Source of the DNA: Malacoraja senta
Taxonomy: Eukaryota
DNA: 64,000 nt
Reading direction: 5' to 3'
NCBI GenBank assembly: GCA_038087875.1
Contig: CM075977.1
Coordinates: 227,726,001 to 227,790,000 of the forward strand
In this document: piece by piece, positions 7,228 to 58,089 of the stretch
Layout: each line of letters starts with the position of its first letter
Numbering within the stretch: position 1 is the first letter of the stretch
The notes under the pieces: generated by a model
Seen by the model: only the letters and a program-made list of their open reading frames with translations
Database searches by the model: none
What the model was told of the DNA's origin: nothing
Program-made: the position numbers and the translations under genes

Positions 7228-9479
7228 AAATTGGATACTGGGTAGATGGTAAATTGAAACAAAAACATTGGTCCAGCAGGCCAATTCTGAATTTGAAAAG
7301 ATCTGTTTCAAATTCAGAGCTTCTAGACTGGGGTGGTTGCAAAATTTTAACCACAACTTTTTAAAAGAAAATGTAAATGGTGCACGAGTAGGAGAATAAG
7401 ATGACAAAGTTTGCTCTCTCAGAAAATAAGTACAAGCACAATGGGACAAATTACTTTTTTTTGTGCAAAATCAGCTACCATATCTAACTTTTTAAATAAC
7501 TTATTTTTCTCTAATGACAACTAGAGTGTGTTGAAATTACATAATTATATTGTAATTCTCCAACTTTTAGACAAATAATTCATCTTGTGGGAAATAAGCT
7601 ATAATATAATTATACTGACATCCCTGAATTAACTCATTCAGCAGTCAAATAATTGAAACAGGTCTTGATCATTCATAAACAAATGAAACAGATAAATTCA
7701 CAGAAAAAGATGCAAAAATGTTACTCATTTTATAGCCAAAAAGATAATCATTCCCCTAAACTGTATTTATATAATGAGATTTATGCTTGAGAATATTTTG
7801 CACATCAATATCCCAATGAGATATCATCACAGTAAAACCATATGAATGTTACCGAGTAGAATTTAGAAAAGCCTATCCAATAAATACAAAACTTTCAAAG
7901 GCAATATTTTATTGCAGTTAGATAGAATGCACATCCAATCAGCTGTTCTTGTGTTCGTCTAATGTTTTATTACAGTCTTAAATACAATTGAGAACTTGCT
8001 GTATTTAAAAAATGGTAACCTTTTAATACATTAAAAGTCAACTGACTGATGTGCATTTGATTAGGTTCCACATACTTCAATATACTTCTGAGATTTGGCA
8101 GGACCATACAAAAAGAAAAGGAAAGAATCAAGAAACTTTATATAAGTTGTATAAAGTTCCAAATAAAAAGTGTAAATTCATGTCAAATTCTTTCCAAATA
8201 AACTACAACTCGATTTATCCCTTTAATATTTTGCTAAAAGAAACTCAGTAGCTGACGTTTTGTGCAGATAAATATTTCATCTTGAAATCAATTAAGAGAT
8301 TAAGAACAAATAAGGTATTCGTCTAATTAATGTCATTGTGTAAAGGTTCCAAACCCTATAGCACAATCCTGGGAGCTCAAGTTAATAAATACCAACTACT
8401 CAAGCTTCAGTTATGTTTTAAGTATCAGCTGAAATTCACAACTGTTACCACCATGCAGATTCCTGTTGGCAATCTATTTTCTTCAGCGCTTTAAGTGGCC
8501 CCAGCTGCTCACTGACTGCCATTTGTTAGCTTCAGACTCACGTGCAATTAGTCTTTGGTCCAATTCCAAAACAGTGAATCAACGCTCCAAATCAAACTGA
8601 TTTATGGTTTGTAAGCTACAAGATAGAACACTGAAAGGTTTTTATCACATTTTACAGCATGTAAGAGAAAGGAAATGTGGAAGTTAGAGAGGCTAAGGGG
8701 AGACATAAACAATTGTCCTTAACAATTAGGATTAAGGAGAATCACAAGGCATTTTATATGTTTATTAGAAGCAGAAGAGTAGTTAGGACAAGAATAAATC
8801 TACTCAGGTACAAAGGAGGGAATTTATTTGTGAAGCCAGAGAAAGTGAGTGTGGGTCTTAATGAATACTTTGCATCAGTGTTCACCAAGGAGGAAGGCAT
8901 GGTTGATGGTAAGATTAGGGAAAGTTTGTTAATATTCTAGGGTATGTTGATATTAAGGAGCACGAGGTGTTGGGTATCTTGAAAAACACTGAGGCAGTTA
9001 AGTCCCCAAGGATTGATGGGATCTATTTTAGAATCCTGAGGAAAATAAGGGTGGAGATTTTGTTGGGATCTTGACAGAGATCTTTGACTCCTTTGCAATA
9101 GGCAAAGTGCCAGTAGACTGGAGAATTGCCATTGTAATTATTTTGCTCAGGAAGGGCAACAGGGACAAGCCAGGAGAGTATAAACCAGTGAAGGAAATGA
9201 TTAGAGAAAATTGTTAAGGACAGGGATTACTTGCATTTGGAAAAACCATTGACTTATTGTAGAAAATCAGCATAGGTTGTGTAGGGGGGAAGTCCCATCT
9301 TGCAAATGTAATTATTTATTTAAAGAAGTGACCAAGATTCTTTGCAGTGGATGTGATCTATGTCGGCTGGTCCAGAAAATTGGGTCATATGGGATACATC
9401 TAAATTGGTAAATTGGATCAAAAATTGGCTTGGTCATAGAAGGCAATGGGTAGCCTCTTTCAACAGGAAGTCTATACTC

Positions 9480-11533
9480 GATACTCATCTAACAATATGA
9501 GACGTCTACTCAACATAATGCACTCACACAAATCTGAAGATCAAGAATTATCAATTATTTCGCTGGATGCTGAAAAAGCATTTGATCAAGTAGAATGGAA
9601 TTATATGGATAAAGTATTACAAAAATTCCAACTGGGGGAGAATTTTATTCTATGGATCAAGTTACTATATAACAAACCTACAGCTAGAATACTAACTAAT
9701 AACATATTATCCTCGAAATTCCAACTATCAAGGGGAAATAGACAAGGATGCTCATTATCACCACAGCTGTTTGCTCTCATTATTGAACCGCTAGCAGAAA
9801 AAATTAGAATACACCCTGATATCCATGGATATAATACTAAAGACTCATATAATAAAATATCTTTATACGCGGATGATATATTACTGTACATTACAAAACC
9901 TCAAATCACTATACCAAATATATTAAATTTAATTGAAGACTTTGGATCTTTTTCTGGATATAGAATAAATTGGAATAAAAGTGAAATTATGTCAATAAAA
10001 CCGAAAGATTCAACACATCTTTTAAAATTCCCTTTTAAAATATCTACAGAAAAATTTAAATACTTGGGAGTCGAATTTACCAGAACATATCAAGGTATGT
10101 TTGGGGCAAATTTTGACCCCCTACTTAATAAATTAAACACACTAATTAAATTCTGGAAAACGCTCCCGATGGCTTTAATAGGCCGAATAAACGCAATAAA
10201 AATGATCTTTCTACCACAAATTTTATACCTATTTCAATCGATTCCTATATACTTACCAAAGAAGTTTAAAAAAAAACTCGACTCAGATATCACTAATTTT
10301 ATATGGGACTATAAATCACATAGAATACAAAAAACTCATCTGAATAAACCTAAAGTATTAGGGGGTTTAGCACTACCTAACTTTATGTATTATTATTGGT
10401 CAGTAAATATAAAAATATGATTCAACTGATGGATAACTCCGCCCAGCAAGTGGACTGGATTGTAATGGAGAAAGAGGATTGCTCCTCAGGAAACATTGGA
10501 GCGATCCTCCTTTCTCCAATGAAATTGAATAACATAAATTATAATAAGAACCCAATTATTCATAGTACAATCCGAATTTGGAAACAAATAAAACAAAATT
10601 TAAAATTAAGAAATTTATCACTTTTATTACCTATAGTTAATAACCCTTCGTTTAATCCCTCTATTATAGATAAAGCTTTTACACATTGGGATAGACTAGG
10701 AATTAAAACGCTTGGTGACTTGTATGAAACTGGAAAATTACTTTCATTTCAACAATTACAAATAAAATTTAAACTCGGAAATAATCAATATTTTAAATAT
10801 TTTCAAATATGCGACTATTTGAAAATATATACAAAAGATCATTATAATAACCCAGTAGATATATTCGATGAGGCAATGCAGATAAAAGCTGAATCAGCAA
10901 ACTTAATATCATATTTGTATAATATTATCTTAAATGTAGAAATACCATCTACGGAGGGTATCAGAAGAGACTGGGAACAAGTTAGCTATTAAAATTTCAA
11001 AGGAAAGTTGGAATGAACACTTATTAAACGTGCACAAATGTTCGATTAATGTAAGACACACTTTAATACAATTTAAAATTTTACATAGATTATATTATTC
11101 GAAAACTAAAATTCATAAAATTTTCCCAAATGTATCGTCTATTTGTGATAAATGTCAATCCCAAGAAGCTACTATAGCGCACTCATTCGTTTTCTGTACA
11201 AAAATTCAAAAATTTTGGAATGAAATTTTTGAAATCTTTACAAAGTTATTTAAAATAAGACTGATACCCAAAGCAGAATGGATTATCTTCGGAATAACGG
11301 AAGATGGCCCAGAACTAAATGTGTTTCAAAAGAAACTAATGGACTATGGGTTAATAACTGGAAAAAAGCTAATTCTAAAATTTTGGAAGAAGGCTCCAAT
11401 ACCAACTATAAATATGTGGACTTCAAATATGTTCGAAACATTACACCTAGAAGAGATAAGACTCCTCCTAGCAGGTAAACCAGATCACTTCCACCTGACG
11501 TGGTCTGCATTTATAGAATTATTACAAATATAG
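9480..11533 (+). pseudogene. L1 ORF2 reverse transcriptase and C-terminal zinc-knuckle region, two frameshifts
   Basis: SLDAEKAFDQVEW, RQGCSLSPQLF, SLYADD, FKYLGV, GGLALPN, CDKC...H...C across ORFs 9446-10420, 10396-10992, 11030-11533. Confidence 0.93.
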
Positions 11534-14993: not shown

Positions 14994-15865
14994 ACTTAGT
15001 TTAGGGCTATTCAGAGGAACAAACGCATTTCAAATAAACAGACACTCAGCAATATTTAACATTTCTAAATAACATGTGGTGGTAATTCTGCTGGATGTTA
15101 TTTTCAAGTGACAGAAATAGCAGGTTAACCAGTGTACTAGATTGACATGAGATTCCAATCCAGCTTTGACAACAAGCAATATAATTCTTACAAAAACAAA
15201 ATTAATCAAAGACAATTTAAAAACATCAACATGGAGTAGACCCACTGGACGCATGGCATAATTAATGACACTAGATTTTTTGACTGGCTTTATAAAAAAA
15301 CTTCTTGGAATCACAGACGTTTAAGATTTTCTGACACCCTGTGAATGTTGTAACAATAAAACATCAAACAGATAGGATTTTATGACACTGATAATAGCCT
15401 GCGATGGAATTAGCAACATCATCATAAGAATTTGAAACTGAACATTAAGTTTTCTGCCACTGATGAGTTTGTGACAAAATGGAAATAATATCCACTAATT
15501 TGCATCTGTCACTCATCTGCAGTCTCTTCTTGTGGTATTTGCTATGCAGTGTGGGATTAGATTTGTAATGCTGCTCCTGATAGATTCACAGCAGATGTGG
15601 AAGACAGAACAACAACTCAGCAGCAATGATTAAGGAAAAGTAGACTTATACGCCTTGAAGCTCAATAAGCAGGAGTGGAACATTGAGGATAGTCAATAAA
15701 AGGAAAAGGCCATTCATCAATATTTCACAGTGGTGCTTTTAACTGAGGTTGAAAATGTTTAGGCTGAGGGAAGTGTGGTGCTTAAGGAGTAATATCAACC
15801 ATCTGGAGTGGGGAAGTGCTGGCAAACCCTTAACCCGCTATCCCCTCCCACCCAACAAAAATTAT

Positions 15866-15957
15866 TAAGAAGGGTCTCGACCCGAAACGTCACCCATTCC
15901 TTCTCTCCAGAGATGCTATCTGTCCTGCCGAGTTACCCCAGCATTTTGTGTCTATCT
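15866..15957 (+). mobile_element. short Penelope pseudo-LTR module with damaged hammerhead core
   Basis: ttaagaagggtctcgacccgaaacgtcacccattccttctctccagagatgct, same module as 60638-60725. Confidence 0.8.
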
Positions 15958-16687: not shown

Positions 16688-16894
16688 TCTATCTATATTA
16701 CTAAAAGTAAGATCGTGACTGCTTTTGGCTCGCTGTGCTTTGAGAGAATGCCGCCACCTACGGCTGTCATTTTTGGCCACCTCGCTCAGAACCCCCCTCT
16801 GGACTGGACCGGAGGATCTTTCCCATCGATGAAAAATCAGAGAGATATTAATGTTTAAAAAAAATTACCATTCTGTCTGCTGCCCCCGCTGGCG

Positions 16895-17024
16895 GCAGGG
16901 GGGAGGGACTATAAAACCCGGAAGTGTCGTGCCTCACTCAGTCTCTGCCAGACGGAGGAAGCGAGAGGGTCAAGGCTCTCTGACCTGCGAATAACACTGA
17001 ACGCACGTCTACTCCACGGTGAGT
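16895..17024 (+). promoter_or_regulatory. Helitron-borne Pol II core promoter plus first exon and splice donor (putative)
   Basis: G-rich box, TATAAAA at 16910, CCGGAAGT ETS site, Inr TCAGTC with A at 16940 (30 nt from TATA), ACG|GTGAGT donor at 17019. Confidence 0.65.
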
Positions 17025-17039
17025 CCCCAGGATGTGGTT

Positions 17040-18050
17040 TTCAGCAAACTAATGTGTTTTGTTGGCTTGCTAAGTGTTTTTTGCCCAATTGGCTTTTTTA
17101 AGTGCTTTCAGCAAACGAGTGTGTTTTGTTGGCTTGCTAAGTGTTTTTTTGCCCAATTGGCTTTTTAAAGTGCTTTCAGCAAACAAATGTGTTTTGTTGG
17201 CTTGCTAAGTGTTTTTGCCCAATTGGCTTTTTAAAGTGCTTTCAGCAAACGAGTGTGTTTTGTTGGCTTGATAAGTGTTTTTTGCCCAATTGGCTTTTTA
17301 CAGTGCTTTCAGCAAACGAATGTGTTTTGTTGGCTTGCTAAGTGTTTTTTGCCCAATTGGCTTTTTACAGTGCTTTCAGCAAACGAATGTGTTATGTTGG
17401 CTTACTAAGTGTTTTTTGCCCAATTGGCTTGGCTTTTTAAAGGGCTTGCTTGCAACAGTTTTCGGATAGATAACGTGTGTTTTGTTGGCTTGCTAAGTGT
17501 TTTTTGTCCAAGGCTTTTTACAGTGCTTTCAGCAAACGAATGTCTTTTTTTGGCTTGCTAAATGTTTTTTGCCCAATTGGCATTTTACAGTGCTTTCAGC
17601 AAACAAATGTGTTTTGTTGGCTTGCTAAGTGTTTTTTGCCCAATTGGCTTGGCTTTTAAAGGGCTTGCTTGCAACAGTTTTCGGATGGCTAAAGTGTGTT
17701 TTGTTGGCTTGCTAAGTGTTTTTTGCCCAATTGGCTTTTTAAAGTGCTTTCAGCAAACAAGTGTTTTGTTGGCTTGCTACGTGTTTTTTGCCCAATTGGC
17801 TTTTTTAAAGTGCTTTCAGCAAACGACTGTGTTTTGTTGGCTTGCAAAATGTTTTTTGCCCAATTGGCTTTTTACAGTGCTTTCAGCAAACGAATGTGTT
17901 TTGTTCGCTTACTAAGTCTTTTTTGCCCAATTGGCTTATTACAGTGCTTTCAGCAAATGAATGTGTTTTGTTAGCTTGCTACGTGTTTTTTGACCAACTG
18001 GCTTGGCTTTTAAAGGGCTTGCTTGCAATAGTTTTTGGATGGATAAAGTG
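17040..18050 (+). repeat. ~66-67-bp minisatellite, about 14 units, with a recurring longer variant
   Basis: Unit tcagcaaacgaatgtgttttgttggcttgctaagtgttttttgcccaattggctttttaaagtgctt; variant with aaagggcttgcttgcaacagttttcggat appears three times. Confidence 0.95.
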
Positions 18051-18134
18051 AATAAACATTTTATTAGATCAGAACTGTGTTTAATTTCAAAATTGGCGCT
18101 AATTCTGTGATTTTCGCTTAGTTGCAAGATAGCG

Positions 18135-18280
18135 CCGATGTCGTCATTTCCGGTTAGCGGCATGCTGGCGCAGTGCGTCATTTCCGGTTCGTGGCAAGCA
18201 GCGAGAGGGTGACGTCAAGATGGCGCAGAGTGCAGGCGCCTTTGAATAATTCAAGAGAGCTGACTGTCTATGGTGAGTGT
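18135..18280 (+). promoter_or_regulatory. CpG-rich housekeeping-type motif cluster
   Basis: Two CGTCATTTCCGG (ETS-CRE composite), TGACGTCA at 18210, CAAGATGGCG (YY1) at 18216, ATG|GTGAGT donor at 18273. Confidence 0.5.
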
Positions 18281-18673
18281 GTTTGTTGGATGTTATTTAA
18301 AGCACGTTTTTGCTTCAGCACCAGCAGCCTCTACAGGAGGCTTTAAAGATTTGTTTTACACACTGTATATTCAACATGTTCTGAAGTTACTTGGCATTTT
18401 AGTATTGGGTGAGNNNNNNNNNNNNNNNNNNNNNNNNNNNNNNNNNNNNNNNNNNNNNNNNNNNNNNNNNNNNNNNNNNNNNNNNNNNNNNNNNNNNNNN
18501 NNNNNNNNNNNNNNNNNNNNNNNNNNNNNNNNNNNNNNNNNNNNNNNNNNNNNNNNNNNNNNNNNNNNNNNNNNNNNNNNNNNNNNNNNNNNNNNNNNNN
18601 NNNNNNNNNNNNNNNNNNNNNNNNNNNNNNNNNNNNNNNNNNNNNNNNNNNNNNNNNNNNNNNNNNNNNNNNN

Positions 18674-19006
18674 TGTGTGAATGAGTCTGTGTGTGTGTCT
18701 GTGTGTGAGAATGTGTGTGTGTGTGTGTGTGAATGAGTCTGTGTGTGNNNNNNNNNNNNNNNNNNNNNNNNNNNNNNNNNNNNNNNNNNNNNNNNNNNNN
18801 NNNNNNNNNNNNNNNNNNNNNNNNNNNNNNNNNNNNNNNNNNNNNNNNNNNNNNNNNNNNNNNNNNNNNNNNNNNNNNNNNNNNNNNNNNNNNNNNNNNN
18901 NNNNNNNNNNNNNNNNNNNNNNNNNNNNNNNNNNNNNNNNATGAGTCTGTGTGTGTGTGTGTGAATAAGTCTGTGTGTGTGTGTGTGAATGTGTTGTGTG
19001 TGTGTG
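18674..19006 (+). repeat. (TG)n-rich microsatellite (also 24182-24240)
   Basis: tgtgtgaatgagtctgtgtg units flanking gaps and the DIRS element. Confidence 0.95.
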
Positions 19007-19510
19007 AATAGTAAGATTAAATGAGAACTTACCAGTTTGAAGTTTGATCTTTATTTTATGAGGAGTAACGTTGAGGGATTACGTGAAGAAGACCCCGTCC
19101 AGCCACACATGCGTCAATCTTTCAAAGCAGCGGAGTGACAATCACAGACGATAATTACTGAAGTATGATAGTAAGATGCATAAAGACTTAGAACTACCAG
19201 CTTGATCCTTTTATGAGGGTGGGAGCGGAGGGCACGTAATCCCTCAACGTTACTCCTCATAAAATAAAGATCAAACTTCAAACTGGTAAGTTCTCGTTTA
19301 ATCTTACTATTTTACTTCGGAGTCACGTGAGTGACTACGTGAAGATTTCAAAGCTCTGTGATTTCACACCGTGGATTAAAATCCAGGTGCTCACTGCACT
19401 GATTGACTCTATTTGAGTAAGCACAATCAACAATGCATAACCACAACATTAAATGTAATCAGTTAATGGTTCTATTAATTTTAACAAAAGTAACAAATTA
19501 GGCCCATTTA

Positions 19511-20507
19511 TTATAATGGGGGATTTAATACTGAATCCAGCACGGCATCACTAAACACCCCGAGATCTTTAATCTCCTTATGGTAATACTTGTGAAACAT
19601 CTGTTCACTTGCCCATCCTGCGGCCGCGAGGATAAGGTCTATTGGCACATCTGAATCCCTGGCCGCCGTTGTTGATGCCGCCCTGGTGGAATGAGATCTA
19701 AATTTATCAGTATCAATACCTGAATAAATCAACACCTGTTTCAACCATCTTGAAATTGTCTGTGTTGACACTTTCTTATGAGGCTTTTTATGACTAATAA
19801 AAAATGCCAATTCTGTGCCTCTTAAGATTCTTGTTGTTTCTATGTAACATTTTACATATGTTACTACACATAGCCGTGGATCTGTAGGATATGTTAAAAA
19901 ACTCCAACTTACATCCCGTGAACCCAGGTCTACTTTGCTTCAGTAAATCATAGACATAGAATGTAACGGCATTCGCCCCTACCTTCATTCTGTCAATTCT
20001 TAGTTTCTGTAATGTTTGAACTCTCTGAGCTGAAACTAATGCCATGAGCATAACCAATTTCATGGTGATTTTTGGCTAATGACAGAGTTTCAATAGGATT
20101 CCAATCCTCAGCAGCATCAGTACATCTTTTACATTCCAGATTTCTGTATACCTAGGTCTAGGAGGATTGGAGTTGAAAATTCCTTTCATAAACCTACAGA
20201 CCCAAGGATGTGATCCTATTGGATTTTGTTCTGATTCACTGCTTAAATATGCAGAGAGTTCACTTCATGCAGTATTGATTGCACTATAACTTAATTTTAA
20301 TTTGTAGTATAGAGTTTAAAGAAACTCTATTACATCTGAAATTTCTGCTGTGTTATATGCAATATTCTTTCCTGAACAAAACACCTCCCATTTCTTTATA
20401 TAGGAAATGTACTGCTTCTGGGTACTATTCCTCCAGGCTGCTGTCATAACATCCACCGTACGATCTGATAATCCTTTTCCAAGATATGGCCTTCTTAGAA
20501 TCTGCAA
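19511..20507 (-). pseudogene. DIRS tyrosine recombinase (frameshifted)
   Basis: AWRNSTQKQYISYIKKW, LMALVSAQRVQTL, FRSHSTRAAS, ILAAAGWASEQMFHKYY: R-HxxR-W-Y catalytic signature. Confidence 0.9.
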
Positions 20508-20546
20508 ATCAACAAACCAATACGATCATGTAAAGGATGTGGTTCA

Positions 20547-21041
20547 TCAGTTACAGGGTGTACAAGCAGTTTTATCTGCTTTGGAATAATCATAAGGGGG
20601 TTTTTGATCATTTTTTAACACCAGTGGGTACCATAGCTGTGTAGGCCAATCTGGTACTACCAAAATCCCTGAGGCTGAGTCTTGTTTAATTTTCTGTATG
20701 CTTCTGTTGATTAAACAAAATGATGGAAATGCATACAGAAACATACCACCCCAATGTAGCGAGAAAGCATCCACCGCTACTGCACCAGGATCAGGTTCCC
20801 ATGACACATATTTAGGCAATTGGTGGTTTAGTCTTGATGCAAACAAATCAATCTCTGGCATTCCAAATTGTGTTACAATTTGTGTAAATATTTCCTGATT
20901 TAACATCCATTCTGTATTATCATTAAATTTACGTGATATTTTGCCTGCAATTAAGTTAAATTTTCCTGGTAAATATATTGCTGACAGCCAAATGGTTCCT
21001 GGCAATACACCAGGTCCAAATTTCATTTGCCAATCTATCAC
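20547..21041 (-). pseudogene. DIRS RNase H end and DNA adenine methyltransferase-like domain
   Basis: YLPGKFNLIA, PEIDLFASRLNHQLPKY, AVDAFSLHW, YAFPSF, ILVVPDWPTQLWYP. Confidence 0.85.
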
Positions 21042-22482
21042 ATGATTCTGATTTTGATACCACCCATGTGATTTAGGTATGCTACAGCTGTAGTATTGTC
21101 AACCTGTACCTGAACATGCACATTTCCCATATTAGTGCAAATAAGCTTTAAGGCCATGAAATGCTCCTAACAGCTCTAGGTAATTTATTCCTTAATTTTC
21201 AAGCAAAGGTACTTCATCGACATTCCACCTACCTCCACAGCTGGAAATCATGTTAGTTGCGCCCATCCAAGAGCACTTACATCAGTCTGTAGAATGACGG
21301 AAGGTGTTTCTACCAGAACTTTTCTGGAAGCATTAGAGACAGTGTTAATCCACCATTCTATTTCTGTAATGTATCCAATTGTTAATTTCATGGCCTGTCA
21401 AAATGCCCTGTATTCATTTTTAATGCTTGTACCTTAGCCTTCTGTAAACATTGATAATGCAATGGTCCAAACCTGACAGCTGGAAACCCAGCAATTAATT
21501 TGCCCAGCAAGCTTGCCACTTCTCTAATTGAAGGCTTGTCCTCATTTATGAGTTTAGTGCAATCTTCAATTAACTGTAGCCTTATCTTTTGGCAAGGTGA
21601 TTACCATGTGTTCAGAGTTAATTGTGAACCCTGGCTAATCAATTATTCTTGCTTGGTAACAATTTTGATTTTTGTAGGTGAATAATGAAACCCATTTTTT
21701 CAAAATGTATTTGACTCTAGATACTTACAATATTGCAGTAGCCAAAGTGTCCCGCACAATCAGAATATCCTCTAAATAAACCATTAATACATGGCCCTCA
21801 GCTCTTAGCAGAGCTAAATTGGTTTGAATAATTTTAGTGAATAATCTTGGTGCTGATGTCAGGCCATTGGGCAATGCTTTAAATTGCCATAACTGACATC
21901 CATCTAAATTTCAAATATCTTTGATCAATACCATGCATTTCACAGAATAATATGCATTTTGCAGATCTGTGCTTGCCATGTAGCAATTCTTTGTGACCAG
22001 CTGAATGGCATTTAGTAAATGTTTCCATTTTGGAATGTTTCTATTGTACATAAAGGTTTAACATTTTTCAGATCCGAAAGGATTCTACATCCACCATCCT
22101 TTTTTTTTTTTTTTTTTTTCTCTTCTGGGAAATATTTGACACAAACTGATGGTGTTGTTCTACTGACTTTTCTATAACCTCCTTTTCCGCATAAAATTTT
22201 CAATTCTCCCTTGATCAACTTATTCTGTTCCTTTGAGAAAATCCGTGACCAGTTTGAATTATGCTGAATTGGAGGATCCAAACGTGGAGTGAACTCAATT
22301 TTGAATCCTACAATGCTACATAGAATAAATGAATAATTTGTTATTGATTGCCATTCTTTTAGGAAGAATCGTAACCTTCCCTCTATTTGTGAGTGTGAAA
22401 CATTTGTTGTGTTTCTTACCAGACCAAGCCCCCCTACCTCGGGGTTTGCCACCGGCAATTGTTGTCCCCTTCTAGTAGACAC
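21042..22482 (-). pseudogene. DIRS reverse transcriptase/RNase H (degenerate)
   Basis: GRLRFFLKEWQSIT, KKDGGCRILSDLK, LPNGLTSAPRLFTK, VYLEDIL (YLDD altered), multiple frameshifts. Confidence 0.85.
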
Positions 22483-22630
22483 ATTGTAACCTCCACGTAT
22501 CCTTGGTGCAGCACGTCAACGTGTATACGAGAATGATAGGGTTGTTCCTTCTCCTGCACCAGCATTTCGCCTGTAGGGATACTGCCTTCGCACCGCTCTG
22601 CTCAGCATAGGTAATCCTTTAGCTTCTTTG

Positions 22631-23759
22631 CTAGATTTTCTCCATATTTGGTGTTATTGTATTTTTACGAATACAATTTATTTCAAAGTGCGCACTACAC
22701 ATGAGTGCTAAGGCATTTTGTTGTGAATTCGATATAAAATCTTCATCCAATACCTCCATAGTTAATTCCTTGGGCTGATGGGAGAGTAGATAATTTATAG
22801 TCATAGCTATTTCCTCTCTCAAAGGTTCCCCTGTTACTGTGGGAACAGCAAACATTTGTGCCAGCCTTGGAACATTTTAGCTCTGATAATGGACTCTGGT
22901 CCTGATATAAATCATCATTTGAATCTAGATATTCATCTTTATGTTGGGTAATTTCTGGCTCCCCTGTTCCAGGTAAGTCTCTGCCAGATTCCCCCTGCGC
23001 GGGCTCTCTTGTAGGCCCACGGATAGGCAGCCCTGTTTCAGGTGCTGCTGGTGCTGGCTCAACTCTAGGCCAACGCTTCATAATGTTTTCTTTTGAAATT
23101 GTCGGTGCTGGCACATATGTACGGTTGTACTGTCTTTGCTCAGACATTTGTGGTACTGGCTCTCAGTAGGCCAGCACATATATTGCCTTTTTACGGGCAT
23201 TCCTGGCACTGGCTCTCCTGTAGGCCAGCACATATATTGCCTTTTTGCGGGCATTTCTGGCACTGGCTCTCCTGTAGGCCAACCACTGTAATAGCTTTTC
23301 ACAGGTATTTCCGATGGCTCTCCTGTAGGCCACCCTTGTGCCTGTCCCATCCAAGGCACACTCTGTGCTATCCTTTATTGGCCAACACCGACCTAAATCC
23401 TCCTGTGGGAGTTCTTCGTAAATCATTTTTCCCCTCAGGAGCTCTAAGCTAGCGACCCTTGCAGCCATAATATTTTCTGCTTCAGGAGGGTATACCTCTG
23501 GGTCTAACTCATCCGAGTCTACAGGTCGGGCCGACTTTTGTCCAGCCTTGCGCCCCGCCGCCGGCGGTTTAACAGCACATTCGACCGCAACGGGAGTTAA
23601 ATGGCTTCGATGCCACTGACTCCTCTGCCTGACGCCCGCTACCCTTAGAATCTGGGGTTTTACCTGCGGTGCGTCCCTGTCCTCTCCTTCCCCTACGTTC
23701 TTTTCCCATTGTAACTTGTGTGGACCTCTACCAACACGTCTGAGCGGGAAGAAAAGCAC
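22631..23759 (-). pseudogene. DIRS ORF1/gag-like region with 54-bp coding repeat
   Basis: Overlapping broken ORFs upstream of RT; 18-aa repeat WPTGEPVPxMPxKRQYMC at ~23150-23335. Confidence 0.65.
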
Positions 23760-24802
23760 CCTGTAAGTGAAAATGAAACCACTTACCTTCCGACTTTTAC
23801 TTTAACTTTGCTTTTTACTCACCGGCTGGAGGAGCTCCTGCTCCTCCACACACGGTCATGAACGCTATGCGTCTGATCGATATGACGCGTGTGCGGCTGG
23901 ACGGGGTCTTCTTCACGTAGTCANNNNNNNNNNNNNNNNNNNNNNNNNNNNNNNNNNNNNNNNNNNNNNNNNNNNNNNNNNNNNNNNNNNNNNNNNNNNN
24001 NNNNNNNNNNNNNNNNNNNNNNNNNNNNNNNNNNNNNNNNNNNNNNNNNNNNNNNNNNNNNNNNNNNNNNNNNNNNNNNNNNNNNNNNNNNNNNNNNNNN
24101 NNNNNNNNNNNNNNNNNNNNNNNNNNNNNNNNNNNNNNNNNNNNNNNNNNNNNNNNNNNNNNNNNNNNNNNNNNNNNNNNNCGTGCGTGAGAGAGAGAGT
24201 CTGTGTGTGAGTGTCTGTGTGAGGTGGAGGGTGTGTGTGATCAACAAATAACAAATAGTACAAATAATATAGTATTTTGTAGTTCAGAGCTTATTTGTTA
24301 TGTTTAATAGCCTGATGGCTGTCAGGAAGAAGCTGTTCCTCAATGTGGATGTTACAGTTTTCAGTTTACAAAAGTCGGACGTGACTCCAGAAGTCGGGCA
24401 TCAGTCAGTCCGTCCACAAGCCGTGAGTCAGTCAGTCAGTCCAAAGGCCATGAGTTAATCCCAAGGCAGGAGTGAGTCCAGAGGCCATGAGTAAGTCACT
24501 CACCGCCCCCCCCCCCACTGACATCCCCCACCTCAAGACACTGCCCTCCTCCTGGCTATAGGATGCGCCCCCTCCTGCCCCCTACTGAAGCCGCCCACAT
24601 CCCCCGCTGGAGGACACCCCCCCTTTCTCATCAGCTCACGAGAGCCCCCGCCTGAAGCTGTCCCCCTCCCTTGGCTGCACGACCTTTGCCACCCTCCACC
24701 CTACCCTGACAGCCCCCGCCTCAAAAAAATGTTTTGCACAAATTCTTCAGTGTTCATTAACAACTGAAATTGTCTTTGGGCTGCTTTTTCGACATCATGT
24801 CA

Positions 24803-26571
24803 GGAAAAGTTAGAGGTCAAGGTGATGTGGCTATTGCTGTAGCATCCTCTGGGAAAGCAGCTACATTAATGCCTGGTGGAAGAACTGCACATTCTCGATT
24901 CAAGATACCCATCCAAGTGGCCGAGGATACATTCTGCAACATCGAGAAGAACTCTAAAGGGCCTGTCCCACCAGCATGCGATTGCATGCGGCGAGCGCGA
25001 CCAAACGTGGTGGCTTGAGGCGTACGGCCTCGCGGGGCCGGTTCCACTTCCAACCGCGGAGCCGTCTGGAGTTGTGCGGAGCTTGTCCCGACATCATACT
25101 CACCAATCAGCTGGGCAGGAGGCGGGCCGACTGAATTTGGACGTCGCACGGCGTCGGGCGGTTACGTCATCACGCAACGGCACGCCGGCGGTGATGTCAT
25201 CGCGCAACGCCACGCGCTAGGCATACGCCGTCAAGATGTTGCGTTCGGCGTCAAGACGCTGAGTACGGCGTCAAGGCGGTGCGTGCGGCGTTGAGGCGGT
25301 GCGTGCGACCTCCATGTGGCTGCGGGCCGGCAGGCCGTTGCTGCGTGGAATTTTTGAACACTGTCAGTTTTTCGGGACCAGCTCCGCACAACTCCATGCG
25401 GCTCCGGCGATCGAAGTGGGCCCAGCCCCGCGAGGCCGCACGGCTAGCGCGACCACGTTAGGTCGCGCTAGCCGCATGCAGTCGCATGCTCGTGGGACAG
25501 GCCCTTTAGACGGCACATTTCATGAGGCAAGTGAAAGTCATTGTTTGGGATGAATGTCCAATGATTAGGCGAGGAAGCTTTGAAGCGATGGACAGAACTC
25601 TTCAAGATGTCTGCAGCAACACTAAGCCTTTTGGCGGCATTCTTATAGTTTGTTGTGGCAATTTTCGACAACCACTTGCTGTGGTGAAAAGGGGAAATGA
25701 TGCTGATGTTGAAAATGCCTGCATCAAGAAATCCTACTTGTGGAGACTTTTCACCAAGTTTCAAGTGCACACAAATATGCGATTGACAGAGGGAGAAGGC
25801 AACTATTCGCAATTTTTGTTGAAAGTTGGAGAAGACAAGATTTTAAAGATTGAAGACAATGAAATTGAAATCCCACAAGACATGCTTCTATCAGCAGAAA
25901 CACTGGAGGATTGTATTGATTTGATCTATCCCACATTTGACAATCCTGCAGAATTATTCTCCACCAATTGTATCTTGGTTCCTCACAACGATACCATGAG
26001 AAGCATCAATTCTACATGCATCAGACGCTTCCCTGGAATCGTTAAGGAGTACTTTTCTTTCAATGCTGTCACTGACGGAACTCATGATACTCACTTCCCA
26101 ACAGAATTCCTCGATTCACTCGAGCTCTCTGGATTACCACCACACAAATTGGAGTTGAAAAAAGGATCTCCAATCATATTAATGAGAAACTTGGAGCCGC
26201 CAAAGCTATGCAATGGAACGAGGATGATTGTGGAAGAAATACACAATAATCTGATCGTTGCAAGAATCAACATGGGAGCCTTCAAAGATGACATTGTTCT
26301 CATTCCTAGGATAGCACTCATTTTGACAGAAGGTGAAGACATTCCCCTTCAGCGGACCCAATTCCCCATTCAATCAAGTTTTGCTATGACGATCCATAAA
26401 GCACAAGGACAAACAATGCAGAAGGTGTTGATCTACCTCGACAAACCGGTATTTCAGCATGGACAACTATATGTGGCTCTTAGCCGAGGAAAGATGAAGG
26501 GAAATGTCAACGTTTTCCTGAAGGATGGAACATCGACCAAGAATGTTGTCATTAAAAGCGTGCTTCGTTGA
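24803..26571 (+). pseudogene. Helitron PIF1-like helicase C-terminal part, interrupted by a MITE
   Basis: AVASSGKAATLMPGGRTAHSRFKIP [MITE] VIVWDECPM, PFGG...GNFRQ, TNMRL, LCNGTRM, FAMTIHKAQGQT, HGQLYVALSR; removing the MITE and one 3-bp TSD copy restores frame (EKNSKTAHFMRQ). Confidence 0.93.
24958..25505. mobile_element. PIF/Harbinger-type MITE (GC-rich subfamily)
   Basis: AGGGCCTGTCCCAC...GTGGGACAGGCCCT termini; flanks TAA and TTA; related to 43955-44344. Confidence 0.88.
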
Positions 26572-27933
26572 ATGATGACTTCTGAGATAAATTCTCAGAT
26601 TTTCTTTCTTAAAATTTGACTGCTGAATCTCTCTATATTAAAATTGTCTCTTTTTATCAACAGGAAATAGTCATCAAGAGGCAGTGAGCAACAGAACACA
26701 ACAAGAGACACAACAAGAAAGAACTTAATAATTCTCATCTTTAACATTTAAATTGTTCTTATATTTTAAGAATCATTCACATTTTAAATTTTAATAAATC
26801 TTTTTTGCACTTTTGATGCCTGTGTGTTCTTCATCACAATGTGAACCTAATGGGCAGAAATGGCTGCTCTGTGGGAGAGCCACTAAGAGTGCATGGGGGG
26901 AGGTTGTGGGGAGATGCACTGAATGCGTGGGGAGAAGGGGAATGGCAAGGAGCAGAGTGGGGGGGTGAAGGGAGCAGGGGTGACTGAGTGAGCTGCCAGT
27001 GTACCAGGCGTGAGTGACTGCACTGCCAGCCCACGAGCCATGAGTAAGTGAACTGCCAGCCCACCAGCCGTAAGTGACTGAACTGCCAGCCCATTAATCC
27101 ATTCAGTCCACCCTCTCCCCCTTCTCTCTCACAGTCTGTCATCTGTTTTGGGCAGACAAGAGGATTTTTCCCATCAATGAAAAATAAAAGAGTTATTAGT
27201 GTTTAAAAAATGTTGAGATTCTCTTTCCTGTCAATCACGCCTGAAGGCCACGTCCCTTCTGGTGGGAGGGGGGGAGGGGACTATAAAACCCGGAAGTGTG
27301 GGCATGCCTCAGTCTCTGCAAGATGGGGAGGGAGAGGTCACGACTCACTGTCTTTAGTGGCCTTGCACCTGCTTCAAATGGTATGAAACTGCACTTGAAT
27401 TTGGTGCCCTTGCACCCTGCTTGAAATGGAATTTCAAGGAATAGCCGTGAGTCAACTGCGAGCCCACCAGCCGTGAGTGAGTGAGCGAGCTGCCAGCCCA
27501 ACAGCCTTGAGTGACTGAGCCGCCAGCCCAAGAATCCATCCGGCCCATACTAGCCCTCTGGAAACCAGTCCCTTCAGCGCACAACACCCATACTAGCGCT
27601 CCAGAAAGGCCCCCCCCCCCCTCACTGGCAACCAATATTGGAATTGAGGTGTAGAGGTGGAATATTGGGTTGGGGGACCAGCCCTCCCGTGTGATGCTGG
27701 GACCCAACGGGTCCCACTTAGTCTAGTTCTAAACTAAACCCAGAATCCCACATACTGCTTTAACAATATCCTGCCTGTTTCAACTAACTGTGGATAATAC
27801 ACCTCCACTTCTCTGGTCTGGTACCCGTTAATTCTTCTCTCTTGTTTATATTGTCTCTTTTCATTGTTCCTATCAAAATGTAATACCTCACACATTTCTC
27901 AGAAATTAAATGTCATCTGTGATGTGCCACTTT

Positions 27934-35756: not shown

Positions 35757-35982
35757 AGATAGACACAAAATGCTGGAGTAACTCAGCAAGACAGGCAGCA
35801 TATCTGAAGAGAAAGAATGGGTGATGTTTCAGGTCGAGACCCTTCTTCAGTCTGAAGTAGGGTCTTGACCCGAAAAGTCACCCACACCTTCTCTACAGAG
35901 ATGCTGCATGTCCCGCTGAGTTACTCCAGCCTTTTGTGTCTGTCTTCGGTTTAAACCAGCATTTGCAGTTCCTTCCTACACA
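35757..35982. mobile_element. head-to-head fold-back pair of Penelope hammerhead modules
   Basis: ~95-bp inverted arms meeting at cttcag-t-ctgaag (axis 35851). Confidence 0.88.
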
Positions 35983-43652: not shown

Positions 43653-43954
43653 AAATGTAATTGCTTAACTGATTGAATAAAGAAATAAGGAAAAAGATGC
43701 TGAACTATGGGGATACATCAGCCAATGGAATTAAAATTTAGATTTGTCAAATAAAAATCTGATACTGATATCCTGAATCCAGATAAATGACTCTCATACT
43801 GCAAACATCTATGACTTCCAAATTTACATTCCCTCTCTATCAGATAAAGCTAATAGATAATATTAACTTCACTCTGGCAATAATGAATCCATCACACTAA
43901 TTTCTTCCAAAATTATTTTACAAGTTTGCAGGTTGATCTTCATTGAATTAAAAG

Positions 43955-44344
43955 TACGCAAGCGCTACCAAATCGGAAGCAGGGGCCGCGCGGAGGTCGA
44001 GTGACGTCAAGACAGTGCGTACGGTGGCGAGGCGGTGCGCACGGTCGTTGAGGGCGGTGCGCACGGCCTCGAGACGGCTGCGTCCGGCGTCGAGGCAGTG
44101 CGCACGGCTGTCGATGCGGCGCGCACGGCCTCAATGCGGCTGCGGGGCAGCAGGCTGTTGCCGCACGGAATTTTTGAACAGTGTCAGTTTTTCGGAGCCC
44201 CGCGTGATGTCGGGACCAGCTCCGCACAACTCCATACGGCTCCGGCGATCTAAATGGGACCGGCCCCGCGACCTCCCGCACGGCCCCCGCTTGCGGTTAG
44301 GTCGCGCTTGCCGCATGGAGTCGCATGTCCGTGGGACAGGCCCT
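43955..44344. mobile_element. truncated Harbinger-type MITE
   Basis: Right half homologous to 25200-25505, ends GTGGGACAGGCCCT|TAA. Confidence 0.85.
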
Positions 44345-48113: not shown

Positions 48114-48321
48114 ACATAACTACTTTCATTTACATGACATTGTAAACATTATGGTGCCCTGAAATGGGGGGACTATGTATAAACACTGCTATAATTTCTA
48201 CATGGTGAAACCAAAATGTATAAAAATGGCCTTTATTAAAATCTGACAATGTGCACTTTAACCACGTTATTTTTTCTATTACAAATCTCAAATTGTGGAG
48301 TACAGAGACAAATAAATAAAT

Positions 48322-54502: not shown

Positions 54503-55856
54503 TCTATATTACTAAAGATCTTGACCGCTTTCGGCTCGCTGTACTGTGATTTCCGAGAGAACGCCGCCACCTACGGCCGTCATTTTTGGCCACCTCGCTC
54601 AGAGCCCCCCTCCGCCTTCTGGGACCAGAGGATTTTTCCCATCGATGAACAATCAGAGAGATATTCATGTTTTTTAATTTTTTGCCATTCTCTCTGCTGC
54701 CCCTGCTGGAGGGAGGGGGAGGGACTATAAAACCAGGAAGTGGTGTGCCTCACTCAGTCTCTGCAAGATGGAGGAAGCGAGAGGTTCACGTCTCTCTGAG
54801 CTCTGAATAACACTGAACACGTCTACTCAACTGTGAGTGCCCTTAATGTGGTTTGAAAATGAAAATATGGTTGGTTTGAAGTAAAAAGGCACTGCCTGCA
54901 AATGGTTTTTGGGGGGTTTGGGTTGAAGTGAAAAGGCACTGCCTGCAAATGGTTGTTTGTCTAAACTTGACAACTTCCTGTTTGCACTATATTGATTTTA
55001 GATAAAACGCTACCACTTACTGCTGTGATTTTTGGCCATCTTACTCGGTTCCCCTCTGCTCATCAGGTGCAGAGGATTCTTCCCATCAATGAAAAACAAA
55101 AGTGTTATTAGTGTTTAAAAATGTTTGAGAATCTCTCTCCTGTCAATCACGCCATGAAGGCCACACCTTTTCCGGTGGGAGGGGGAGGGATTATAAAACC
55201 CGGAAGTGTGGGTGTGGCTCAGTCTCTGCATGATGGGAGAGGGAGAGGTCACGACTCTGTCTGAGCTGTGAATCAACTGAACACACTGAATGTCTACTGA
55301 ACTGTGAGTGTGGTGTTTTGTGTGGTTTTATGGTGGTTTTTATGGTGGTTTCACCCTGCTTGAAATAGTAGGAAACTGAACCTGAATTTGGTGGCCTTGC
55401 ACCCTGCTTGAAGTGTTATGAAACTGCACTTGAATTTTGTGGCGTTGCACCCTGCTCGAAGAGGTAAGAAACTGCACTTGAATTTGGTGGCCTTGCACCC
55501 TGCTTGAAATGGTAGGAAAATGGATTTGAATTTGGTGGCCTTGCACTCTGCTTGAAATGGAATTTCAAGGACTAGCCGCGGGTCAACTGCCAGCCCACCA
55601 GCCGTGAGTGAGCTGCCAGCACATCAGCCATGACTGAGCTGCCACCCCAAGAATCCATTGTCCCAAACAATGTCCATACTAGCCCTCTGGAGACCAGTAG
55701 TCCCTGCAGCCAACAACACCCATGCCAGTGCTCCAGAAAGCCCCCCCCCCCCCCCACTGGCCACCAATATTGGAATTGGTGGAGAGGTGGAATATTGCGT
55801 CGGGGGACCAGCCCTCCCGTGTGAACATGGGACCCAACGAGCCCCACTTAGTCTAG
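54503..55856 (+). mobile_element. non-autonomous Helitron, copy 1
   Basis: A|TCTATATTACTAAA start, subterminal hairpin, CTAG end. Confidence 0.92.
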
Positions 55857-56231
55857 TCTATTACTAAAAGTCTGATCTTGACCGCTTTTGGCTCACTGTG
55901 CTGTGATTTCCGAGAGAACGCCGCCACCTACGGCCGTGATTTTTGGCCACCTCGCTCAGAGCCCCCCTCCGCCTTACTGGACCAGAGGATTTTTCTCATC
56001 GATGAAAAAGCAGAGAGATATTAATGTTTTTAAAATGTTTGTCATTCTCTCTGCTGCCTCTGCTGGAGGGAGGGGGGGACTATAAAACCGGGAAGTGGTA
56101 TGCCTCACAGTCTCTGCAAGATGGAGGAAGCCAGAGGGTCAATTCTCTCTGAGCTCTGAATAACATTGAACACATGTCTACTCAACTGGGAGTGCCCTTA
56201 ATGTGGTTTGAAAATGAAAATTTGGTTGATT

Positions 56232-56506
56232 TGAAGTAAAAAGGCACTGCCTGCAAATGGTTGTTTGGGGTTTTGGGTTGAAGTGAAAAGGCACTGCCTG
56301 CAAATGGTTGTTTGGGGGGGTTTGGGTTGAAGTGAAAAGGCACTGCCTGCAAATGGTTGTTTGGGGGGTTTGGGTTGAAGTGAAAAGGTACTGCCTGCAA
56401 ATGGTTGTTTAGGGGGTTTGGGTTGAAGTGAAAGGGCACTGCCTGCAAATGGTTGTTTGGGGGGTTTGGGTTGAAGTGAAAAGGCACTGCCTGCAAATGG
56501 TTGTTT
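56232..56506 (+). repeat. 48-bp minisatellite A (about 6 units; about 2 in copy 1)
   Basis: tgaagtgaaaaggcactgcctgcaaatggttgtttggggggtttgggt. Confidence 0.95.
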
Positions 56507-56899
56507 GTCTAAACTTGACAACTTCCTGTTTGCACTATATTGATTTTGGATAAAACGCTACCACTTACGGCTGTGATTTTTGGCCATCTTACTCAGTCCC
56601 CCTCCGCTCATCAGGTGCAGAGGATTCTTCCCATCAATGGAAAACAAAAGTGTTATTAGTGTTTAAAAAATGTTGAGAATCTCTCTCCTGTCAATCACGC
56701 CATGAAGGCCACACCTTTTCCGGTGGGAGGCGGAGGGATTATAAAACCCGGAAGTGTGGGTGTGGCTCGGTCTCTGCATGATGGGGGAGGGAGAGGTCAC
56801 GACTCTGTCTGAGCTGTGAATCAACTGAACACACTGAATGTCTACTGAACTGTGAGTGTGGTGTTTTGTGTGGTTTTATGGTGGATTTTATGGTGGTTT

Positions 56900-57298
56900 C
56901 ACCCTGCTTGAAATAGTATGAAACTGCATTTGAATGTGGTGTCATTGCACCCTGCATGAAATGGTATGAAACTGCATTTGAATGTGGTGTCGTTGCACCC
57001 TGCATGAAATGGTTTGAAACTGAATTTGAATTTGGTGGCCTTGCACCCTGCTAGAAGTGGTTGGAAACTGCACTTGAATTCGGTGGCCTTGTACACTGCT
57101 TGAAGTGGTAGGAAACTGAACCTGAATTTGGTGGCCTTGCACCCTGCTTGAAGTGGTATGAAACTGCACTTGAATTTTGTGGCCTTGCACCCTGCTCGAA
57201 GAGGTAAGAAACTGCACGAATTTGGTGGCCTTGCACCCTGCTTGAAATGGTAGGAAAATGGATTTGAATTTGGTGGCCTTGCACTCTGCTTGAAATGG
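56900..57298 (+). repeat. 48-bp minisatellite B (about 8 units; about 4 at 55352-55560)
   Basis: caccctgcttgaaatggtatgaaactgcacttgaatttggtggccttg. Confidence 0.95.
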
Positions 57299-58089
57299 AA
57301 TTTCAAGGAATAGCCGTGAGTCAACTTCCAGCCCACCAGCCGCGAGTGAACTGCCAGCATATCAGGCTTGAGGGACTGAGCTGCCACCCCAAGAATCCAT
57401 TTGGCCCACAATGTCCAGTAGTCCCTGCAGCCAACAACACACATACCAGCGCTCCAGAAAGCCCCCCCCCCCCCCACTGGCCACCAATATTGGAATTGGT
57501 GGAGAGGTGGAATATTGCGTCGAGGGACCAGCCCTCCCGTGTGAACATAGGACGCAACGGGTCCCACAGTCTAGTTCATATATAAATATACACTGTTTTG
57601 TTTTCTCGTTGATAACATTGTTTACAGAGTACTATGTTTACATTCTGTTGTGCTGCTGCATGTAAGGATTTCATTGGGACATGAGAGAATAAAACAATCT
57701 TGACTCTTGACTTACGTCGCTAATGTGTGGGATAGAACTAGTGTACGGGTGATCGGTGATCAGCGTGGACTCGGTGGGCCGAAGGGCCTGTTTCCATGCT
57801 GTATCTTTAAATTAAACTAAAACACTAAAACCAGAGGAATTCTAAAGAGTCTCTACCCGAAACGTCACCCAAATTCTTCTATCCAGAGATGCTGGCTGCT
57901 CCATGGAGTTCCGCCATACAATTAAAGCATGGAATAGTCTTCATCCTACTATAGGTACCCAACCAGAAGCAATTAAATTTAAGGTAGCTCTTTTTTCCCC
58001 CAAGAACCCTTTCTTGTTTAAGTCCAAGTATATATATATATATACAATAAATAAACAGATAAAATGCAATAGGCTGTTATTTTGCATCC

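What the first reader, a model, noticed from the sequence alone, without database searches (positions are those of the whole stretch)
16895..17024. Helitrons carry a complete promoter-first exon-splice donor cassette
Seen: G-box, TATAAAA, (C)CGGAAGT, Inr TCAGTC 29-30 nt after TATA, then a GTGAGT donor ~80 nt later. TATA copies at 16910, 27282, 54726, 55192, 56081, 56740; intact donors at 17019, 54833, 55304, 56852. Each short Helitron has two diverged modules that both keep the motifs. Established: this spacing is canonical for Pol II core promoters. Inference: a mobile promoter with unpaired donors that could splice into downstream host exons; conservation between old duplicates implies selection.
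Basis: partly seen in the sequence, partly recalled or inferred. Interest (0 to 1): 0.7.

Follow-up and report, generated by a model that had tools for sequence, protein, structure and literature searches.

The report
Skate Helitrons carrying a gene-start module
A family of rolling-circle transposons (Helitrons) in a skate-like fish carries a stretch built like the start of a gene (promoter, short non-coding first exon, splice donor), a kind of cargo already well described in bat Helitrons, and whether any copy here is active could not be tested.

Summary
The block GGACTATAAAACCCGGAAGT occurs six times, all on the + strand, at the stated places. TATAAAA is intact in 6/6 copies. The Inr TCAGTC lies 29-30 nt after it in 4/6. 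GTGAGT follows 77-83 nt later in 4/6. The "G-box" is a G-rich run, not CACGTG.

The carriers are canonical Helitrons: 5' TC, a hairpin followed by 3' CTAG, and A|T flanks. There are two head-to-tail short elements, one 5' part and one 3' part lying behind a decayed PIF1 helicase remnant. Each short element holds two paralogous modules that are about 69% alike. The motif columns are 54/55 identical against 186/271 elsewhere (p about 4e-7), so the motifs are clearly better kept than their neighbours.

The best reading is a gene-start module acquired once by an ancestral element and kept under constraint while the family diversified. It more likely came from a host gene, as NUBPL did in bat HelibatN3, than from the element's own promoter.

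Activity is untested. The scan had already flagged this cassette on other DNA (s1-203287, s1-184396, s1-213412).

Verdict: a new member of a known kind, of moderate interest.

The parts
16692..16707 (+). Helitron 5' terminus TCTATATTACTAAAAG. The flanking base 16691 is A.
16708..16893 (+). Upstream part of the module, homologous in all M1 and M2 copies. It includes the conserved box GGAGGATCTTTCCCATCGATGAAAAA at 16811-16836.
16894..16909 (+). It is not CACGTG.
16910..16916 (+). TATAAAA
16917..16926 (+). ETS-type site CCCGGAAGTG abutting the TATA box
16938..16944 (+). Inr-like TCAGTCT. Its A at 16940 lies 30 nt after the first T of TATA.
16940..17018 (+). Predicted non-coding first exon of 79 nt. 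Other copies carry a 12-13-codon upstream ORF that ends at a conserved TGA. This copy has lost its ATG.
17019..17024 (+). 5' splice-site consensus GTGAGT (context ACG|GTGAGTC)
17040..18040 (+). 67-bp minisatellite that starts about 25 nt after the donor. The other copies have different 48-bp arrays at the same point.
24770..26571 (+). 5'-truncated PIF1-like helicase (C-terminal half of a Helitron Rep/Hel), split by a 558-bp inverted-repeat insert at 24953-25510. An M2-type cassette and the Helitron 3' end lie downstream of it.
27159..27726 (+). M2-type module, 5'-truncated, with TATA at 27282 and the donor deleted. It is followed by the Helitron 3' region, the hairpin GGGACCCAACGGGTCCC (27699-27715) and the terminal CTAG (27723-27726). 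The flanking base is T.
54503..55856 (+). Short Helitron A. Module M1: 5' terminus, TATA 54726, Inr A 54756, donor 54833, 48-bp array. Module M2: degenerate head TCTAAACTTGAC at 54960, TATA 55192, Inr A 55221, donor 55304, 48-bp array, 3' region, CTAG 55853-55856.
55857..57574 (+). Short Helitron B, abutting A head-to-tail (CTAG|TCTATTAC). In M1 (TATA 56081) the Inr and donor are both mutated. In M2 (TATA 56740) the Inr is mutated and the donor at 56852 is intact. CTAG lies at 57571-57574.

Best explanation
The stretch is the core of a gene-start module carried inside a family of mostly non-autonomous Helitrons of a skate-like cartilaginous fish.

The module runs from just inside the Helitron 5' terminus. 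It contains:
- about 200 nt of upstream sequence with several conserved boxes;
- a G-rich run, TATAAAA and an abutting ETS site;
- an Inr 29-30 nt after TATA, then a YY1-like GCAAGATGG around +10;
- a 77-83-nt non-coding exon with a small upstream ORF;
- a GTGAGT donor and about 25 nt of 'intron', after which minisatellites begin.

One ancestral element already carried this module. It later gave two sublineages (M1, M2), which became joined in the two-module short elements. While those source lineages diverged to about 69% identity, the promoter and donor motifs stayed almost unchanged. The module was therefore functionally constrained in the elements that were still multiplying.

I consider it most likely that the module was picked up once from the 5' end of a host gene (promoter, 5' UTR exon, donor, start of intron 1). 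This is how bat HelibatN3 acquired NUBPL, and other Helitrons of this genome are reported to have taken first exons in the same way. It would then have been kept because promoter-bearing Helitrons multiply better.

Inserted copies are portable promoter and exon-trap units in principle. The copies in this window are old passengers, several already damaged, and no activity is shown.

Shown: the anatomy, the copy structure, the Helitron identity and the excess motif conservation. Inferred: the host origin, promoter and donor function, and the selective reason.
For: Helitron identity:
- 5' TC termini preceded by A.
- 3' hairpin followed by CTAG and a T.
- A PIF1-type helicase remnant on the same strand just upstream of one 3' end.
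- The same family occurs in an unrelated public contig at 87% DNA identity (L004).

Module anatomy and spacing. The composite motif is absent elsewhere in the window, with 0.15 expected.

Single origin of M1 and M2: homology runs from just behind the 5' terminus to about 25 nt past the donor, with the same boundaries in both.

Constraint: motif columns are 54/55 identical between the M1 and M2 consensus against 186/271 other ungapped columns, Fisher p = 4e-7.

Host-capture origin:
- In the only copy linked to a helicase, the cassette lies downstream of the helicase stop, not upstream.
- A related Helitron (L003, 67% amino-acid identity, similar hairpin) has no such cassette in its 3' region.
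- A second, unrelated promoter/exon/donor block follows in the same element.
- Earlier notes of this scan report captures of first exon plus donor from HTRA2, ALG13 and SAC3D1, and cargo swapping, in this genome's Helitrons (these are leads I did not check).
- In bats, 5' ends of genes are the commonest Helitron cargo and such elements reach the highest copy numbers (PMC4224331). The NUBPL cassette drives exon-trapping transcripts (PMC4778049).
Against: - No parent gene was found. The exon is non-coding, so protein searches cannot name it, and I had no access to the rest of the genome.
- The module starts right behind the 5' terminus in both sublineages, which also fits an element's own promoter.
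- Selection for promoter motifs in non-autonomous elements has no proven mechanism.
- The conservation test rests on only five copies from two lineages in one window. My wider motif blocks (G-rich run, YY1-like) were drawn after seeing the alignment.
- There is no expression evidence.
Confidence: 0.5

Rival explanations
1. The module is the Helitron's own promoter. In autonomous elements it would drive the Rep/Hel transcript, with a non-coding first exon and a 5' UTR intron. Non-autonomous elements would inherit it because they are deletion derivatives that keep both ends.
For: - The module begins immediately behind the 5' terminus in M1. In M2 it follows a degenerate head, TCTAAACTTGAC.
- Selective conservation of TATA, ETS, Inr and donor between diverged sublineages is what selection on a transposase promoter would give.
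- All four Helitron insertions in the window carry it.
- The element that starts at 16692 has no 3' end before 27726. It could therefore be one long element containing the helicase remnant.
Against: - The helicase remnant has the cassette after its stop codon, not before it.
- No Rep domain or helicase N-terminus lies between 18.4 and 24.8 kb. That space is filled by a minus-strand tyrosine-recombinase retroelement, other repeats and N runs.
- The related element L003 lacks the cassette in its 3' region.
- Other subfamilies are reported with different cargo behind the same ends (s1-177980, unchecked).
Confidence: 0.3
2. The resemblance to a promoter, exon and donor is fortuitous. The conserved islands would serve transposition (binding sites or structures for Rep/Hel) or reflect chance, and the module was never transcribed from its own start.
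For: - No RNA evidence was obtained.
- A single run of 17 identical columns is not by itself significant at 70% identity (my estimate).
- Only two lineages are compared.
Against: - Five independent motifs of known function lie in the canonical order and spacing. The a-priori motif columns are 27/27 identical against a 71% background.
- The composite is expected about 0.15 times per 128 kb searched.
- Known Helitron cis-requirements lie at the termini and the 3' hairpin, not 220-330 nt inside (PMC4778049).
Confidence: 0.12
3. Copies in this window are active now as alternative promoters or first exons of a host gene lying downstream on the + strand.
For: - All copies point the same way.
- Three copies keep TATA, Inr and donor intact.
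- Bat HelibatN3 copies do this at a few loci.
Against: - No host exon was identified in the window. The long ORFs I scanned against Pfam matched only transposable-element domains.
- CpG depletion in most copies suggests methylated, silent DNA.
- Same orientation of three or four insertions is not significant.
- There are no RNA data.
Confidence: 0.08

Closest known systems
HelibatN3 of vespertilionid bats (Helitron carrying the NUBPL promoter, 5' UTR, first exon and splice donor; Pritham and Feschotte 2007; Thomas et al. 2014, PMC4224331; Grabundzija et al. 2016, PMC4778049)
   Same: - It is a short non-autonomous Helitron with canonical ends whose inner part is a promoter, a short first exon, a splice donor and the start of an intron.
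- It is amplified to many copies.
- It has the predicted ability to start transcripts and splice into downstream exons.
   Different: - The host is a cartilaginous fish.
- The exon here is non-coding, whereas NUBPL contributes six codons.
- No parent gene is identified.
- The module is duplicated inside each element as two diverged copies.
- Activity is untested here, whereas the NUBPL cassette was shown to trap exons experimentally.
Other promoter and 5'-end captures by Helibat families (15 genes, 4,690 copies; Thomas et al. 2014)
   Same: - There is a bias towards gene 5' ends.
- Several captured gene starts can sit in one element (a second, unrelated cassette lies at 18100-18284).
- There are signs of purifying selection on some cargo.
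   Different: In bats the parent genes were identified by cross-species homology. Here the origin is only inferred.
Own promoters of transposons that read out into host genes (for example LINE-1 5' UTR or LTR promoters giving chimeric transcripts)
   Same: They are mobile Pol II promoters. A YY1-like site lies just downstream of the start, as in the LINE-1 5' UTR (from my own knowledge).
   Different: Those promoters serve the element's own coding transcript. Here the carrier is mostly non-coding, and the link to Rep/Hel expression is unproven.

Membership tests
Canonical Helitron (rolling-circle transposon) | 5' end begins with TC, 3' end is CTRR | tested here: met
   TCTATATTAC... at 16692 and 54503, TCTATTAC... 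at 55857. CTAG at 27723-27726, 55853-55856 and 57571-57574.
Canonical Helitron (rolling-circle transposon) | Short GC-rich hairpin about 10-12 nt before the 3' end | tested here: met
   GGGACCC-AAC-GGGTCCC at 27699-27715, with slightly mutated copies at 55829 and 57549. It lies 7 nt before CTAG.
Canonical Helitron (rolling-circle transposon) | Insertion between host A and T without target-site duplication | tested here: inconclusive
   The flanks are A (16691, 54502) and T (27727, 57575), with no duplication seen. No empty site could be found in the window to prove the insertion.
Canonical Helitron (rolling-circle transposon) | Autonomous members encode Rep endonuclease fused to a PIF1-type helicase | tested here: inconclusive
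   A PIF1-like helicase remnant (PF05970 at 9.7e-27 and 9.1e-16, PF21530 at 2.4e-15) lies at 24770-26571 just upstream of a family 3' end. No Rep domain is present in the readable sequence.
Helitron with captured host gene 5' end (HelibatN3 type) | Cargo homologous to a single-copy host gene's promoter and first exon outside Helitrons | not testable with these tools
   The exon is non-coding. No genome-wide DNA search of this species was available. Word searches with ORFs over the module found nothing, and the metagenome pattern scan gave only chance hits.
Helitron with captured host gene 5' end (HelibatN3 type) | Cargo lies between family termini and is amplified with them | tested here: met
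   Six module copies in four Helitron insertions in 64 kb.
Helitron with captured host gene 5' end (HelibatN3 type) | Promoter starts transcripts and the donor splices to downstream acceptors | not tested
TATA/Inr Pol II core promoter | TATA box with its first T about 30-31 nt upstream of an Inr A(+1) | tested here: met
   The distance is 29-30 nt in four copies.
TATA/Inr Pol II core promoter | Mapped transcription start at the Inr | not tested
   No RNA data could be reached.

The most novel reading that the evidence does not exclude
The module is not idle cargo. It is kept by selection in the multiplying Helitron lineages because transcription from it matters in cis for the element's success. 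Either a promoter plus a nearby 5' splice site that recruits U1 helps mobilisation, or it is the Rep/Hel promoter with a 5' UTR intron. Skates would then carry a self-propagating promoter and exon trap, built in duplicate, that seeds new first exons across the genome.
Probability: 0.25. Interest if true: 0.65.

Novelty: new member of a known kind. Interest (0 to 1): 0.38.

Why it matters
If the module is or was active, thousands of portable promoter and donor units would have been spread through a cartilaginous-fish genome. That would parallel the bat Helitron burst, the only well-studied vertebrate case, in a lineage separated by more than 400 million years. It would suggest that carrying a gene start is a general route to success for Helitrons.

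The near-perfect retention of TATA, ETS, Inr and donor between two 69%-identical modules gives a concrete handle on a question left open in bats: why promoter-bearing Helitrons reach the highest copy numbers.

For annotation, these copies are a predictable source of false first exons and of possible chimeric transcripts.

Tried and rejected
- **Reads.** After that I sent no further letters of 54400-57700 to collection searches and worked on them only locally.
- **Rfam.** Rfam at the gathering threshold on the whole window gave no match, so the module is not a known RNA gene. A U6-type Pol III promoter was considered and rejected, because nothing like a PSE lies at -55 (sequence).
- **More family copies.** I tried word searches with ORFs that span the module and found nothing. 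A metagenome scan for the 21-mer gave two loci. L001 is a bacterial gene and L002 an unrelated eukaryote-like contig, so both are chance matches.
- **An intact autonomous relative.** The best helicase hits are short contigs. L004 belongs to the same family but ends 84 nt after the stop codon. L003 is a distant relative without the cassette. P0001's contig had no DNA available.
- **Empty site.** A BLAST of the flanks within the window, to decide whether 16692 and 27726 bound one element, found nothing.
- **Independent captures for M1 and M2.** Rejected, because both share the same boundaries and the sequence next to the terminus.
- **N runs.** The N runs (18414-18673, 18748-18940, 23924-24181 and others) were left as they are.

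Full report
**What is there**

The window is repeat-rich vertebrate DNA. Earlier notes of this scan place the genome in a skate-like cartilaginous fish. At 16895-17024 the sequence reads, in order:
- a G-rich run;
- TATAAAA (16910-16916);
- CCCGGAAGTG (16917-16926);
- TCAGTCT with its A at 16940, 30 nt after the first T of TATA;
- a 79-nt stretch without a usable reading frame;
- GTGAGT at 17019.

The 20-mer over TATA and ETS recurs with at most 1 mismatch at 27278, 54722, 55188, 56077 and 56736. All copies are on the + strand, and none is expected by chance. TATA is intact in 6/6 copies. The Inr is intact in 4/6: it was lost through a 2-nt deletion in the 56081 copy and through an A-to-G change in the 56740 copy. 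The donor is intact in 4/6: the 56081 copy has GGGAGT, and the 27282 copy lost it by deletion. The "G-box" is a G-rich box, not CACGTG. TATA, Inr and donor in this arrangement occur nowhere else in the window on either strand. A Markov model gives 0.15 per 64 kb, and none with an ETS site.

**The carriers are Helitrons**

- 5' ends: TCTATATTACTAAAAG at 16692 and a near-identical end at 54503, both preceded by A. A third, TCTATTACTAAAAG, starts at 55857.
- 3' ends: the hairpin GGGACCC-AAC-GGGTCCC, 7 nt, then CTAG followed by T, at 27726, 55856 and 57574.
- Elements A (54503-55856) and B (55857-57574) abut head to tail (CTAG|TC). This matches the "stacked Helitron" pattern noted elsewhere in this genome (s1-193225).
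- A PIF1-like helicase remnant lies at 24770-26571 on the same strand (PF05970, E = 9.7e-27 and 9.1e-16). It is split by an inverted-repeat insert at 24953-25510, and it sits just upstream of the 3' end at 27726.
- A public 1-kb contig (L004) is 87% identical in DNA to 25718-26655, so the family also exists in other public sequence data.
- The element that starts at 16692 has no canonical 3' end in the readable sequence before 27726. In between lie N runs, a minus-strand tyrosine-recombinase retroelement and other repeats. I cannot tell whether 16692 and 27726 bound one long element. I left the N runs untouched.

**Module structure**

Each short element has two modules.
- M1 consists of the 5' terminus, about 200 nt of upstream sequence, the promoter-like core, the exon, the donor, about 25 nt, and then a 48-bp minisatellite.
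- M2 starts with a damaged head (TCTAAACTTGAC against TCTATATTACTAAAGATCTTGAC). It is homologous to M1 over the same span, has its own diverged 48-bp array, and then runs into the family's 3' region.
- The 16692 copy is M1-type but is followed by a 67-bp array.
- The 27159 copy is M2-type, 5'-truncated, with an internal deletion.

Because M1 and M2 share their boundaries and the sequence next to the terminus, they descend from one ancestral element that already carried the module. They are not two separate captures.

**Are the motifs better kept than their neighbours?**

M1 and M2 consensus sequences are about 69% identical by BLAST. In the alignment, the columns of the G-rich run, TATA, ETS, Inr, the YY1-like GCAAGATGG and the donor are 54/55 identical, against 186/271 other ungapped columns (Fisher p = 4e-7). 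Further islands lie upstream (AGAGGATT.TTCCCATC.ATGAAAAA, 24/26; GATTTTTGGCCA) and in the exon. A 12-13-codon upstream ORF that ends at the same TGA is present in both modules.

There are caveats:
- only five copies from two lineages are compared;
- some block limits were set after I had seen the alignment;
- a single 17-nt identical run would not be significant alone.

Even so, the refuting condition "motifs no more conserved than neighbours" is not met. This conservation concerns the lineages of source elements. The inserted copies themselves decay, as shown by the mutated Inr and donor copies and by CpG loss in most copies (o/e 0.36-0.73, against 0.46 for the window).

**Where the module came from**

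Two readings remain.

(a) Capture of a host gene's 5' end. Points in favour:
- In the only copy linked to a helicase, the cassette lies after the stop codon.
- A related Helitron (L003, 67% amino-acid identity, similar hairpin) has an AT-rich 3' region without the cassette.
- A second, unrelated block of the same kind follows at 18100-18284.
- Other Helitrons of this genome are reported to carry first exons and donors of HTRA2, ALG13 and SAC3D1, and to swap cargo (unchecked leads).
- In bats, gene 5' ends are the preferred cargo, and elements carrying them amplify most (PMC4224331).

(b) The family's own Rep/Hel promoter with a 5' UTR intron. Points in favour:
- The module sits right behind the 5' terminus.
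- The motif-specific constraint is then easy to explain.

I put (a) at about 0.5 and (b) at about 0.3. The remainder goes to chance resemblance or a role in transposition.

**Does it work?**

The only information is an earlier, unchecked note of this scan on the same kind of duplicated cassette in another window (s1-203287). It saw read-through transcription but no starts or splicing at the predicted sites in one RNA data set. I found no host exon downstream in the window. The long ORFs I scanned against Pfam matched only transposable-element domains.

**Comparison with what is known**

The anatomy and the proposed mode of action match bat HelibatN3. That element carries the NUBPL promoter, a few codons and a splice donor. 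It traps exons when mobilised, and it supplies start sites for a few bat transcripts (PMC4778049; PMC4224331). Full-text searches found no paper that describes Helitrons of skates or other cartilaginous fishes. The scan itself had flagged this cassette before, on other DNA (s1-203287, s1-184396, s1-213412).

**Verdict**

- This is a new member of a known kind, of moderate interest.

Noticed in passing
window 18100-18284 (+): This is a second, unrelated gene-start block about 60 nt after the 67-bp array. It has two CATTTCCGG ETS sites, TGACGTCA, AAGATGGCG, a short exon ending ...CTATG|GTGAGTG, and CpG o/e of 1.3 over 160 nt. It is either further captured cargo of the Helitron that starts at 16692, or a real host promoter lying just downstream of a Helitron that lacks a visible 3' end. 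The latter is the arrangement from which end-bypass capture would start. An N run begins at 18414.
   Followed up: partly
window 17008-18084; 54864-54958 and 56219-56506; 55320-55560 and 56870-57300: Three different minisatellites (67-bp, 48-bp and another 48-bp unit) start at the same point, about 25 nt after the donor, in the three module variants. The two 48-bp units look distantly related to each other. Copy number differs between the neighbouring elements A and B (2 against 6 units).
   Followed up: partly
window 24770-26571 (+), insert 24953-25510: A Helitron PIF1-type helicase remnant lacks its N-terminal part (Walker A region and Rep). It is interrupted by a CpG-rich element of about 560 bp with 139-nt inverted ends (86% complementary). 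A similar CpG-rich stretch lies at 43900-44300.
   Followed up: partly
window 19500-23800 (-): A retroelement on the minus strand carries a tyrosine-recombinase (Phage_integrase, E = 8.7e-09) C-terminus, so it looks DIRS-like. It lies between the Helitron 5' part and the helicase remnant.
   Followed up: partly
window 55853-55860: Two Helitrons are joined exactly head to tail (CTAG|TCTATTAC). The second head lacks 2 nt (TA) compared with the other 5' ends. This fits insertion of a newcomer at the A|T in front of a resident element, or a tandem product of rolling-circle copying.
   Followed up: no
window, many places (e.g. 15860-15947, 35848-35935, 52969-53056, 60634-60721): An abundant short repeat of about 90-110 nt (core GGGTCTCGACCCGAAACGTCACC...GAGATGCTGCCTG...CTGAGTTACTCCAGC) occurs on both strands, often as close inverted pairs. 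It is probably the tail of a SINE/LINE family.
   Followed up: no
L004 1-944 and L003 4372-5902: Public metagenome-labelled contigs hold this Helitron family (L004, 87% DNA identity) and a relative with a very similar 3' hairpin, GTGACCCAACGGGTCAC...CTAG (L003). The organisms are unknown. Host DNA in those samples is likely.
   Followed up: partly
window 46800-48300 (+): A Tc1/mariner-type transposase occurs in two ORF pieces (HTH_Tnp_Tc3_2 at 3.6e-20, DDE_3 at 5.2e-06). A reverse-transcriptase ORF lies at 9446-10420.
   Followed up: no
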